The translations under genes and the position numbers were made by a program. A stretch of 64,000 bases of DNA from Lytechinus pictus (lineage: Eukaryota), in assembly GCF_037042905.1 (NCBI RefSeq), contig NC_087251.1, positions 16,306,001 to 16,370,000 of the forward strand. The letters are read 5' to 3'. Positions 49,046 through 51,295 of the stretch are shown here, piece by piece. The notes below the pieces were generated by a model. That model searched no databases. It saw only the letters and a program-made list of their open reading frames with translations, and was not told where the DNA came from. Numbering within the stretch: position 1 is the stretch's first letter; the number at the start of each line of letters is the position of its first letter.

Positions 49046-49363
49046 CTACTCCTCTCTCAGCAAATCCAGAAATTTTTTCAGGATCTCTTCCCTACCAAAG
49101 AACCTTCTCTCTTCTTTGGCCCCGTCATGGGACGTTTGTAAGACCTCCTGTTTCTTGTTTGCTTCTAACTCCTCCCTTCTCTTTGCGGCGGCTCCGGCAG
49201 TGGTCTCTGGCTCGTAGTAGCAGTAAGTAGTCTCGATTGTGTCTTCGGCGGCTGCGTTACTATCTTTATTGGGTTGAGGATACGCTCCAACCTTCTCATC
49301 TGCGTTGTTAAGATACGCAGTGTCTATTTTCAGAGTTTCTTCCTTAACAGTCATCCCATGTAC
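49046..49363 (-). CDS. Apextrin-like MACPF-ApeC protein, coding exon 9 (end of ApeC plus charged tail)
   Basis: Acceptor tttttctacag|GTA CAT GGG ATG, phase 0; VHGMTVKEE...GAYP...TYCYYEP...LLREE*. Confidence 0.92.
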   Translation of the reverse strand, partial: VHGMTVKEETLKIDTAYLNNADEKVGAYPQPNKDSNAAAEDTIETTYCYYEPETTAGAAAKRREELEANKKQEVLQTSHDGAKEERRFFGREEILKKFLDLLREE

Positions 49364-49978
49364 CTGTAGAAAAAAGTGGTAATTTCAAATGCATCCTACA
49401 CTATTTTGTTAGAATCATGGCTACCACGAAGTTTCACTTTGCAATCATCGGTAAGGCTATAATTTAAAGAATGCTAAATGACCAGACTTTGATACAAACC
49501 TCAATAGTTGAGAGCATAATTCAAAGAATTGCTGACCCTTTCTTGTAACTGTTCACGATTGACCTTTCATAATTATACTTCCTTTTAATCATCATTGTCA
49601 TAATCATATCAAGTTGGTCTCGATCATATTAAAGATGATTAAATAAGTGGGAAATAACCTTATCCAAAGTTGTATAGATTTAAAAAATCTATGCATGCAA
49701 AAAACGCTATTTGAAGAAAATCAAATGCGTAATGTGATAAGCACTAAAAATTCCCCAGTTTTCTGGCTACAAACCTCTTTATGGAAACACGTTATATCAC
49801 GGTCTTTAGGGCTTTGCATAGCTACTCTCCGGCATAATACTTGCCTGGCAAACGATGAAAAATGCATGAACCTCGCATTGCTGTATTTTGTAATTAAATT
49901 GGTATATGATTTGTCAATTTTGCTTTTTGGTCCGATCTGGGTCATTACGTTTCCGCATTATCGTCGCTGGAGACTTAC

Positions 49979-50184
49979 CTGTTGACACGTTTGGGAGTAT
50001 CTGAAGAGATAAAAGCTCGTCTCGGTAGGAAGGTAAATAGGATGCATGGGGGAGGCATCATTCCGGCAACAAAAGTAGAACTGAGAGGATGTCTTCCTGT
50101 ACATCCCTTCTGGCAACATACCGTGTTGTAAGATGTTATTGTTCGACGCACTCTCAGTATATTTCAGGTATCCCTCTGTGAACT
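49979..50184 (-). CDS. Apextrin-like protein, coding exon 8 (ApeC)
   Basis: ttacag|AG TTC ... CAA CAG|gtaagt; EFTEGY...GMLPEGMY...FYFCCRND...PIYLPTETSFYLFRY..CQQ. Confidence 0.94.
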
Positions 50185-50974
50185 CTGTAATGAAATTAGA
50201 AATAGTGTACATAAATATATACACGACATCGTCAAAGTTTATTGATCACAAATGACCTGCAATCTTGCCTTCATAACCTGAAACTACATTACTTTATCAC
50301 CTTGAAAATTGTTGATACCACAACATGATCAGAGTTCATTGAACCAAAACGCAATCAGACCTTGTTTGTGTCACCTGGACTTGTCAAATGATAAGTAACA
50401 CTGCCTTTGGGAAAGAGGCGCCCACGTCATGCATCTCTTGCTCCCTAAATGCAGGCGAGATAAAAAGTTGTAATCCGGTTTTCACAACTTACTTGTTTCT
50501 ATATCTGGTGGTCCCTTAGCAGGATTTGTATTTTGAAAAAATCGTGGATAAAATTTCGATATGTATGTAACTAAACATGTAAAGGTTAATTTGATAGATA
50601 CCGACTCTCACCCATGTCTTAAGAATGATTATTGCCTTGTTTACTGAACAGATGAGAACGCAAAATGTTTTTAGGATTGAACTATGTTGGCCTACAATGG
50701 ATATTGCTCGTAGTTCGAGGAACCCACAAGAAGACATGTTAGGTCCAAGATTTTAATAAGGTATATATATATATACATAATATGTATTTGATATATTGAA
50801 AATACAAAAGAAATCATATAGAAATTGAGTGATAGTACGTCCTTTGAAAGTAGTGTAATAGCTTTTATAGGTCTGAACTCTCATTCATAGTTTGACTACA
50901 CCATTGTGATATTTTGACAAAGGGAAGAAGCATTAGATATTTGGGGTTAGATGTACGACGGAATACGTTATTAC

Positions 50975-51295
50975 CTCGAGGACAAGAGGCACCATACTTG
51001 TAGATACAATAGGTGCCGGGCATCCAGTCCCAAGATGGTGCATGTGGATCCTGAGACAACTGCTTCACATCCTTTACGCAGAACCATAACTTCGCGCTAC
51101 TCTCAAAGATTTCGTCACTCAAATGTTGGGATGCCGTCCATTGATTCACGCTGAATTCCATGAATCGCATAAGCCTATCACCTTCGTTCCATGTCAGGTA
51201 CTCTGTATTAGGGCAAGTTCCACTTGGGTTCCTGGCTGGCTTTGGCAAGGCATACGTGCCATCTGGCCAGACTATAGGTACACGAACGTCCGGAT
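50975..51295 (-). CDS. Apextrin-like protein, coding exon 7 (ApeC start)
   Basis: cttttcag|AT CCG ... CGA G|gtaata; WPDGTYALPKP..GTCP..W..G..FCVK..WMPGTYCIYKYG..CP. Confidence 0.94.

What the first reader, a model, noticed from the sequence alone, without database searches (positions are those of the whole stretch)
49205..51272. ApeC domain keeps all 8 cysteines but has lost all three DxED motifs
Seen: the eight Cys are present (GTCP, FCVK, YCIY, SCP, FCC, TCQ, YCYY). The positions that normally read DxED instead read roughly RFMEF (GDRLMRFMEFSVNQW), YTESA (GYLKYTESASNNN) and IDTAY (TLKIDTAYLNNAD). Known: ApeC domains are defined by 8 Cys and three DxED motifs implicated in glycan binding. 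Inference: the fold is retained but ligand specificity has switched, retargeting a MACPF protein away from canonical microbial glycans.
Basis: partly seen in the sequence, partly recalled or inferred. Interest (0 to 1): 0.7.

Follow-up and report, generated by a model that had tools for sequence, protein, structure and literature searches.

The report
Sea urchin apextrin paralogue lacking DxED motifs
This is an intact, expressed sea-urchin gene of the apextrin family (a perforin-like part plus an ApeC binding part) whose ApeC part has indeed lost its three acidic DxED motifs, but that loss is old, shared with the original apextrin's own clade and common across the family, so it is ordinary.

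Summary
On the minus strand, three exons (51295-50975, 50184-49979, 49363-49046) encode an ApeC domain. All 8 conserved cysteines are present. The three DxED columns read RFME, TESA and DTAY.

It is the C-terminal domain of an intact 9-exon, 637-codon gene: signal peptide, MACPF, ApeC, plus a 55-residue helical tail. The genome is Lytechinus pictus. The gene is spliced and expressed.

The interpretation does not hold as stated.
- The literature says the function of the DxED motifs is unknown.
- Two characterised ApeC proteins mutated in all three motifs (amphioxus ACP5, snail BgACP1) still bind Lys-type peptidoglycan.
- Loss is common. 14 of 58 ApeC cluster representatives lack all three motifs and only 10 keep all three strictly.
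- 4 of the 7 MACPF-ApeC genes in this genome are DxED-less.
- The gene sits in a fully supported clade with the founding Heliocidaris apextrin, which itself lacks motif 1.
- Motifs 1 and 3 are already gone in the S. purpuratus orthologue. Only motif 2 was lost in the Lytechinus lineage.

The domain is still constrained (dN/dS 0.40 against L. variegatus) and folds confidently (pLDDT 90.7). Verdict: a new member of a known kind, of low interest. The scan holds no other note on ApeC.

The parts
57218..57593 (-). Exon 1: start codon, signal peptide (hydrophobic core LVFLATMLVAAV) and start of the MACPF region
   Evidence: tblastn with the L. variegatus orthologue P0001, 95% identity; spliced model
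56563..56610 (-). Exon 2 (16 codons), MACPF region
55702..55919 (-). Exon 3: MACPF core, ending in the W-G-T of the MACPF signature
   Evidence: Pfam MACPF PF01823, 29.3 bits against a cut-off of 21.5
55277..55366 (-). Exon 4: continues the MACPF signature (H-V-x6-G-M)
   Evidence: 100% identical to P0001 215-244
54347..54497 (-). Exon 5: MACPF beta-hairpin region
   Evidence: the junction 53176|54347 is seen in a spliced RNA contig
52991..53176 (-). Exon 6: linker between MACPF and ApeC; its 3' splice donor is GC, not GT
   Evidence: Junction 51295|52991 in a contig of run X2 and in 2 raw RNA-seq reads of run X7
50975..51295 (-). Exon 7 = ApeC part A: Cys 1-4; motif 1 column reads RFME (51167-51156)
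   Evidence: Pfam ApeC 48.6 bits; alignments; junction 50184|50975
49979..50184 (-). Exon 8 = ApeC part B: Cys 5-7; motif 2 column reads TESA (50158-50147)
   Evidence: Pfam ApeC 64.5 bits; alignments; junction at 49363|49979
49214..49363 (-). Exon 9, first part = ApeC part C: motif 3 column reads DTAY (49324-49313); Cys 8 in YCYY
   Evidence: Pfam ApeC profile 163-208, 13 bits; alignments
49046..49213 (-). Exon 9, second part: 55-residue charged C-terminal tail and TAG stop (49048-49046)
   Evidence: Contiguous with ApeC in an RNA contig; same length in L. variegatus, dN/dS 0.33; predicted as two helices

Best explanation
The stretch is the ApeC domain of an intact, expressed Lytechinus pictus gene encoding a secreted protein: signal peptide, MACPF/perforin-like domain, ApeC domain and a short helical tail. 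It is a paralogue of the original sea-urchin apextrin. The loss of the DxED motifs is real, but it is an old, clade-wide and recurrent feature of ApeC domains, not a recent retargeting event. Motifs 1 and 3 were lost before Lytechinus and Strongylocentrotus split. Motif 2 went later in the Lytechinus lineage. Most likely mechanism (inferred): the disulfide-locked, beta-rich ApeC module remains the binding or anchoring module of the protein. It would attach the protein to polymeric extracellular ligands (cell-wall peptidoglycan-like material or apical extracellular matrix) through surfaces that do not need the DxED loops, and so position the MACPF domain. The DxED loops would be accessory acidic, possibly metal-binding, sites that many family members do without. 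Shown here: gene structure, expression, motif states, phylogeny and constraint. Inferred: the binding role and the dispensability of DxED in this particular protein.
For: Gene model: 9 exons and 637 codons with no stop; the same model on the L. variegatus locus reproduces P0001 exactly. Four splice junctions are seen in spliced RNA contigs, and one also in raw RNA-seq reads. Pfam finds MACPF and ApeC. Motif columns are RFME / TESA / DTAY with 8/8 Cys. Orthologues: L. variegatus reads RFME / TERA / DTAY; S. purpuratus XP_784671 reads ITQP / DDDD / DTMH. Tree (IQ-TREE, LG+C20): {H. erythrogramma apextrin + P0003} + {S. purpuratus XP_784671 + (window + L. variegatus)} has support 100/99. Its sister is a Diadema protein that keeps relaxed motifs. 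A second, separate DxED-less echinoid clade has support 100/100. Survey: 14 of 58 ApeC representatives have no motif and 10 of 58 have all three strictly. At least 3 changes of state are forced by well-supported branches, and 12 by parsimony. In this genome, 4 of 7 MACPF-ApeC loci are DxED-less. Constraint against L. variegatus: dN/dS is 0.095 for MACPF and 0.395 for ApeC (Fisher p = 0.014 against neutrality). AlphaFold2 pLDDT is 90.7. Literature: DXED function is unknown, and ACP5 and BgACP1, mutated in all three motifs, still bind Lys-type PGN and microbes.
Against: No binding data exist for any MACPF-apextrin ApeC domain. The nonsynonymous rate in ApeC is about 3.4 times that of the MACPF part (p = 0.002), which is compatible with some functional drift. 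The Lytechinus lineage evolved faster than the S. purpuratus lineage. Motifs 2 and 3 of the founding apextrin cannot be read, because the deposited sequence matches ApeC only to profile position 91. Expression was low in the two raw RNA runs sampled.
Confidence: 0.78

Rival explanations
1. One reading: the fold is kept but loss of the acidic motifs changed the ligand, retargeting the MACPF domain away from microbial glycans (neofunctionalisation).
For: All three motifs are gone. Motif 2 was lost specifically in the Lytechinus lineage, while S. purpuratus keeps DDDD. ApeC evolves faster than MACPF (dN/dS 0.395 against 0.095). There is a lineage-restricted helical tail. Apextrin in H. erythrogramma is described as an extracellular-matrix and adhesion protein rather than a bactericidal one (papers cited).
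Against: The function of DXED is unknown. DxED-less ACP5 and BgACP1 keep Lys-type PGN binding. The loss is ancient and recurrent. dN/dS is below 1, and the rate acceleration is gene-wide rather than specific to ApeC.
Confidence: 0.14
2. The ApeC domain is a decaying, functionless appendage, or the gene is a pseudogene, and motif loss reflects relaxed constraint only.
For: ApeC dN/dS is four times that of MACPF. The Pfam score is lower than for the canonical paralogue (152.7 against 219.2 bits). Read depth was low in the two raw RNA runs.
Against: The 637-codon frame is intact and has the same length in two species. All 8 Cys and the other invariant columns are kept. dN/dS is significantly below 1 (p = 0.014). 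Correctly spliced transcripts exist. The fold prediction is confident. The DxED-less state has persisted since before the Lytechinus-Strongylocentrotus split.
Confidence: 0.05
3. Alignment artefact: the acidic motifs are present but shifted by a few residues.
For: In the 131-sequence MAFFT alignment the window's motif residues fell in non-contiguous columns.
Against: Three independent alignments agree: MAFFT of 14 sequences, MAFFT of 58, and hmmalign to a profile. No D-x-E-D or [DN]x[ED][DN] string lies within 8 residues of any of the three sites in the translated sequence (printout).
Confidence: 0.02

Closest known systems
Apextrin of Heliocidaris erythrogramma (UniProt O76288), the founding MACPF-ApeC protein
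   Same: Same architecture: signal peptide, MACPF, ApeC. Same fully supported echinoid clade (100/99). 42% identity over 491 residues. Its motif 1 column also lacks the first Asp (F-T-D-D).
   Different: It is a paralogue, not the orthologue. The L. pictus co-orthologue of apextrin lies at C14:7.97 Mb (P0003-like, 60% identity to the H. erythrogramma apextrin). The window protein adds a 55-residue helical tail. The deposited O76288 sequence matches ApeC only to profile position 91, so its motifs 2 and 3 are unknown.
L. variegatus LOC121418993 (P0001) and S. purpuratus XP_784671 (P0130), both annotated 'uncharacterized protein'
   Same: Orthologues, at 95% and 54% identity, with the same exon structure in L. 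variegatus. Motifs 1 and 3 are lost in both.
   Different: S. purpuratus keeps an acidic motif 2 (DDDD). L. variegatus reads TERA where the window reads TESA.
Amphioxus ACP5 and snail BgACP1 (short-form ApeC proteins, PMC8361754 and PMC9585378)
   Same: [quoted passage not shown]
   Different: They have no MACPF domain, belong to different phyla and are not orthologous. Their Lys-type PGN binding has been measured, whereas nothing has been measured for this protein.
Canonical MACPF-ApeC apextrins, for example L. pictus LOC129282359 (P0015, C19)
   Same: Same architecture, same genome, same three-exon split of ApeC.
   Different: P0015 keeps DTED / DDED / DNED and scores 219 bits on Pfam ApeC, against 153 bits for the window gene's orthologue. 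It has no C-terminal tail.

Membership tests
ApeC domain (Pfam PF16977) | Significant match to the family profile over its whole length | tested here: met
   Exons score 48.6 + 64.5 + 13 bits, collinear over profile 11-208. The 95%-identical orthologue scores 152.7 bits over profile 1-208; cut-off 26.5.
ApeC domain (Pfam PF16977) | Eight conserved cysteines | tested here: met
   8 of 8 lie in the conserved Cys columns.
ApeC domain (Pfam PF16977) | Three DXED motifs (described in the literature as 'relatively conserved') | tested here: not met
   RFME / TESA / DTAY: 0 of 3 by the strict or the relaxed rule. This is not disqualifying. 14 of 58 family representatives also have none, and published members ACP5 and BgACP1 lack all three.
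ApeC domain (Pfam PF16977) | Binds Lys-type peptidoglycan or microbes | not testable with these tools
   Needs recombinant protein. Known only for six short-form ACPs.
Apextrin subfamily (signal peptide + MACPF + ApeC) | N-terminal signal peptide | tested here: inconclusive
   The hydrophobic N-terminus was read by eye from the translation. No predictor was run.
Apextrin subfamily (signal peptide + MACPF + ApeC) | MACPF domain upstream of ApeC in one reading frame | tested here: met
   Pfam MACPF scores 29.3 bits on exon 3 and 50.5 bits on the orthologue. PDB sequence hits include Toxoplasma PLP1 (E = 1.4e-9) and MPEG1. The model is a single 637-codon frame.
Apextrin subfamily (signal peptide + MACPF + ApeC) | Groups with the founding apextrin in a tree | tested here: met
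   The clade has support 100/99.
Pore-forming MACPF proteins | Signature (Y/W)-G-T-H-(F/Y)-x6-G-G, and pore formation | tested here: inconclusive
   The sequence reads W-G-T-H-V-x6-G-M across exons 3 and 4. This is a partial match, and pore formation cannot be tested here.

The most novel reading that the evidence does not exclude
After losing its last acidic motif (motif 2) in the Lytechinus lineage and carrying a helical C-terminal hairpin, this apextrin paralogue's ApeC module may recognise a different, non-peptidoglycan ligand (extracellular-matrix component or lipid). That would make a MACPF protein act on self surfaces rather than on microbes. It would also give a natural series (canonical, one-motif and motif-less paralogues or orthologues in sea urchins) for working out what the DxED loops do.
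Probability: 0.12. Interest if true: 0.45.

Novelty: new member of a known kind. Interest (0 to 1): 0.15.

Why it matters
It matters little as a discovery. ApeC domains without DxED motifs are already published, are common, and include the clade of the name-giving apextrin. The useful by-products are these:
- A verified gene model for an 'uncharacterized' L. pictus apextrin paralogue.
- Evidence that DxED motifs should not be treated as defining or ligand-binding features of ApeC.
- A natural graded series for a simple binding comparison in a genetically tractable sea urchin: canonical C19 paralogue, then the S. purpuratus orthologue with one motif, then the motif-less Lytechinus protein.

Tried and rejected
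- **MACPF scan of the genome.** A six-frame scan of the own genome with Pfam MACPF found nothing at genome-wide E-values. Exon-sized pieces are too weak, so MACPF exons of the paralogues were found by tblastn instead.
- **Homologue search with P0001.** The search with P0001 returned only 3 proteins because of its word filter. A second search with the canonical paralogue was needed to reach named relatives.
- **Solved ApeC structure.** No solved ApeC structure was found by sequence; the one hit (E = 0.033) is noise. Foldseek against the PDB gave no match at E <= 0.001; the best relevant rows were the Toxoplasma PLP1 C-terminal beta domain at TM about 0.2. VIA-align against 48,161 chains gave no match at Z >= 2. 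Zero matches is unusual for that tool, so I do not claim a new fold.
- **Model coordinates.** These are not available to scripts, so I could not test whether the three motif loops cluster in space or whether the tail packs on them.
- **Pseudogene and artefact readings.** Both were considered and rejected.
- **Relative-rate test.** Acceleration in the Lytechinus lineage is gene-wide, not specific to ApeC.
- **Earlier notes of the scan.** Nothing on ApeC or apextrin exists beyond this same finding.

Full report
**What is there**

The window has eukaryotic composition (about 36% G+C, short open frames separated by introns). On the minus strand, three open pieces at 51295-50975, 50184-49979 and 49363-49046 are bounded by AG...GT splice sites.
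- Pfam ApeC (PF16977, cut-off 26.5 bits) matches the first at 48.6 bits (profile 11-92) and the second at 64.5 bits (profile 91-164).
- It matches the third weakly but collinearly at 13 bits (profile 163-208).
- Upstream on the same strand lie a start codon with a hydrophobic signal-peptide-like N-terminus and exons that match Pfam MACPF (29.3 bits against a cut-off of 21.5).

**Gene model and organism**

An exhaustive HMMER search with exon A found one close relative, P0001 (637 aa, 92% identical over the exon). Everything else was at 46% identity or less.
- P0001 is 'uncharacterized protein LOC121418993' of Lytechinus variegatus.
- Guided by it, I assembled a 9-exon, 637-codon frame with no stop and no gap relative to P0001, at 95% amino-acid identity. 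The same procedure on the L. variegatus locus L040 reproduces P0001 exactly.
- The window's genome is Lytechinus pictus. Its contig C5 has 57,468,504 bases, exactly the contig length recorded for L. pictus LOC129261943. The paralogue on C19 is 93-99% identical, exon by exon, to L. pictus LOC129282359.

**Expression**

Contigs of public run X2 join 49363|49979, 50184|50975, 51295|52991 and 53176|54347, which are exactly the predicted exon borders. Two raw RNA-seq reads of run X7 also cross 51295|52991.
- The intron after exon 6 has a GC donor.
- One contig runs uninterrupted from ApeC exon C through the C-terminal tail to the stop codon.
- Depth in the two raw runs was low (4 reads each from about 6% of each run).

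**Check of the observation**

Three independent alignments agree: MAFFT of 14 selected domains, MAFFT of 58 full-length ApeC representatives, and hmmalign to a profile built from those 58.
- The eight cysteines fall in the eight conserved Cys columns.
- The three motif columns, which read D-T-E-D, D-D-E-D and D-N/T-E-D in the majority, read R-F-M-E, T-E-S-A and D-T-A-Y here.
- The window coordinates are 51167-51156, 50158-50147 and 49324-49313.

**How unusual is it?**

Not very.
1. Among the 58 representatives (one per 50%-identity cluster, all with 8 Cys or nearly so), 14 have no motif even by a relaxed [DN]x[ED][DN] rule. Only 10 have strict DxED at all three sites. This sample is biased towards relatives of the query.
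2. On a tree of these domains the motif-less state needs 12 changes by parsimony. At least 3 of them are forced by well-supported branches.
3. The L. pictus genome has about ten ApeC loci, seven of them with MACPF exons upstream. Four of the seven are DxED-less: this gene on C7, C14:7.97 Mb, C14:24.84 Mb and C5:2.28 Mb. C19 is canonical at all three sites. C16:7.86 Mb keeps DTED and DDED; its third motif was not read. C16:20.18 Mb is partial (DTEK / DDSD / DGED).
4. A careful tree of 30 full-length MACPF-ApeC proteins, rooted on corals, gives a clade with support 100/99. It contains {H. erythrogramma apextrin O76288 + P0003} and {S. purpuratus XP_784671 + (window + L. variegatus)}. Its sister is a Diadema protein that keeps NTED / DDDD / NTEN. 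P0003 is the C14:7.97 Mb-type protein. A second, separate echinoid clade without motifs has support 100/100.
5. The founding apextrin reads F-T-D-D at motif 1. The deposited sequence matches ApeC only to profile position 91, so its motifs 2 and 3 cannot be read.
6. The S. purpuratus orthologue reads ITQP / DDDD / DTMH. Motifs 1 and 3 were therefore lost before the Lytechinus-Strongylocentrotus split, and motif 2 later in the Lytechinus lineage.

**What the literature says**

[quoted passage not shown] It reports that amphioxus ACP5 is mutated in all three.
[quoted passage not shown] BgACP1 nonetheless binds and agglutinates microbes and binds Lys-type peptidoglycan with high affinity.

The published precedents argue against equating motif loss with a specificity switch.

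**Is the domain still functional?**

- Against L. variegatus (dS about 0.11), dN/dS is 0.095 for the MACPF part and linker, 0.395 for ApeC and 0.33 for the tail.
- ApeC is significantly below neutrality (Fisher p = 0.014). It is also significantly faster than MACPF in nonsynonymous rate (p = 0.002).
- The residues replacing the motifs are nearly unchanged between the two Lytechinus species (RFME = RFME, TESA against TERA, DTAY = DTAY).
- AlphaFold2 on the orthologue's domain with the 58-row alignment gives mean pLDDT 90.7 and pTM 0.89, an all-beta domain.
- In the model the three motif positions begin at residues 44, 117 and 190, exactly 73 residues apart. Each sits at the end of a long strand (E37-44, E110-117, E180-190). 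This suggests three equivalent structural repeats.
- Tajima relative-rate counts show the Lytechinus lineage evolved faster than the S. purpuratus lineage. The excess is at least as strong in MACPF as in ApeC, so there is no ApeC-specific burst.

**Most likely working**

The protein is secreted and has two modules. The disulfide-locked ApeC module serves as the binding or anchoring part, and the MACPF domain as the effector or scaffold. ApeC binding would be to cell-wall-like polymers or apical extracellular matrix, as proposed for apextrin in H. erythrogramma. The DxED loops are dispensable accessory acidic sites. I put about 0.78 on this ordinary reading, about 0.14 on a real specificity change, about 0.05 on a decaying domain and about 0.02 on an alignment artefact.

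**Comparison with the known, and novelty**

The stretch passes the profile, cysteine, architecture and phylogeny tests for ApeC and apextrin. It fails only the DxED feature, which many accepted members also fail. It is a new, so far uncharacterised member of a known kind. The motif-less state is already described for other ApeC proteins. The only mildly new points are that the name-giving apextrin's own echinoid clade is DxED-poor, and that sea urchins offer a graded natural series.

**Limits**

- No binding, metal or pore assay is possible here.
- No solved structure exists.
- The survey set is biased towards relatives of the query.
- Deep nodes of the domain tree are weak.

Noticed in passing
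window 49049-49213 (-): There is a 55-residue, highly charged C-terminal extension after the last ApeC cysteine. It has the same length and is 91% identical in L. variegatus (dN/dS 0.33). S. purpuratus XP_784671 has a shorter charged tail. The H. erythrogramma apextrin-like P0003 and the canonical apextrins have none. AlphaFold2 predicts two helices (residues 587-619 and 623-636) at pLDDT about 60-87. Its function is unknown.
   Followed up: partly
window 52989-52990 (-), intron after exon 6: This is a non-canonical GC-AG intron. The skipped stretch 51296-52990 ends CT..GC on the plus strand. It is confirmed by a spliced contig and by two raw RNA-seq reads.
   Followed up: yes
P0001:357-590 model (window 49214-51295): The confident ApeC model has no detectable relative among solved structures: Foldseek E > 0.03, and VIA-align found no Z >= 2. 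The three motif sites are spaced exactly 73 residues apart at strand ends, hinting at a three-repeat architecture. The weakly ranked Toxoplasma PLP1 C-terminal beta domain (TM about 0.2) also follows a MACPF domain in its protein.
   Followed up: partly
P0166 (H. erythrogramma apextrin, O76288), residues 456-491: The founding apextrin entry matches Pfam ApeC only over profile positions 1-91 and then continues with 36 unrelated residues. The deposited cDNA is probably truncated, frameshifted or alternatively spliced at its 3' end.
   Followed up: partly
G000 C4:4.103-4.116 Mb (L004, L007, L002, L005, L021); C15:27.247 Mb (L010): The L. pictus ApeC repertoire has about ten loci. C4 carries two tandem canonical ApeC units that match a 424-aa dual-ApeC protein (P0012). 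C15 carries a lone DxED-less ApeC 3' exon, with no MACPF or ApeC 5' exon found in the 20 kb upstream. It may be a fragment or a pseudogene.
   Followed up: partly
window 49079, 49104, 49105, 49243, 49251 and 53085: Six single-base differences separate the assembly from RNA contigs of run X2. Five lie in the last exon. They are probably allelic polymorphism in this outbred species.
   Followed up: no
window 63185-63931 (+): Open frames here carry reverse-transcriptase-like motifs (for example ...FADDTNIFF...), which suggests a fragment of a non-LTR retrotransposon at the window's 3' end.
   Followed up: no
window 25360-25900 (both strands): A long trinucleotide-type simple repeat gives poly-Ser, poly-Leu, poly-Thr and poly-Tyr open frames. 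It is low-complexity DNA, not a gene.
   Followed up: no
window 4371-7385 (-): Two long open frames (584 and 317 aa) belong to another gene. Another first-stage note (s1-294520) describes it as IgGFc-binding-protein-like. I did not examine it.
   Followed up: no
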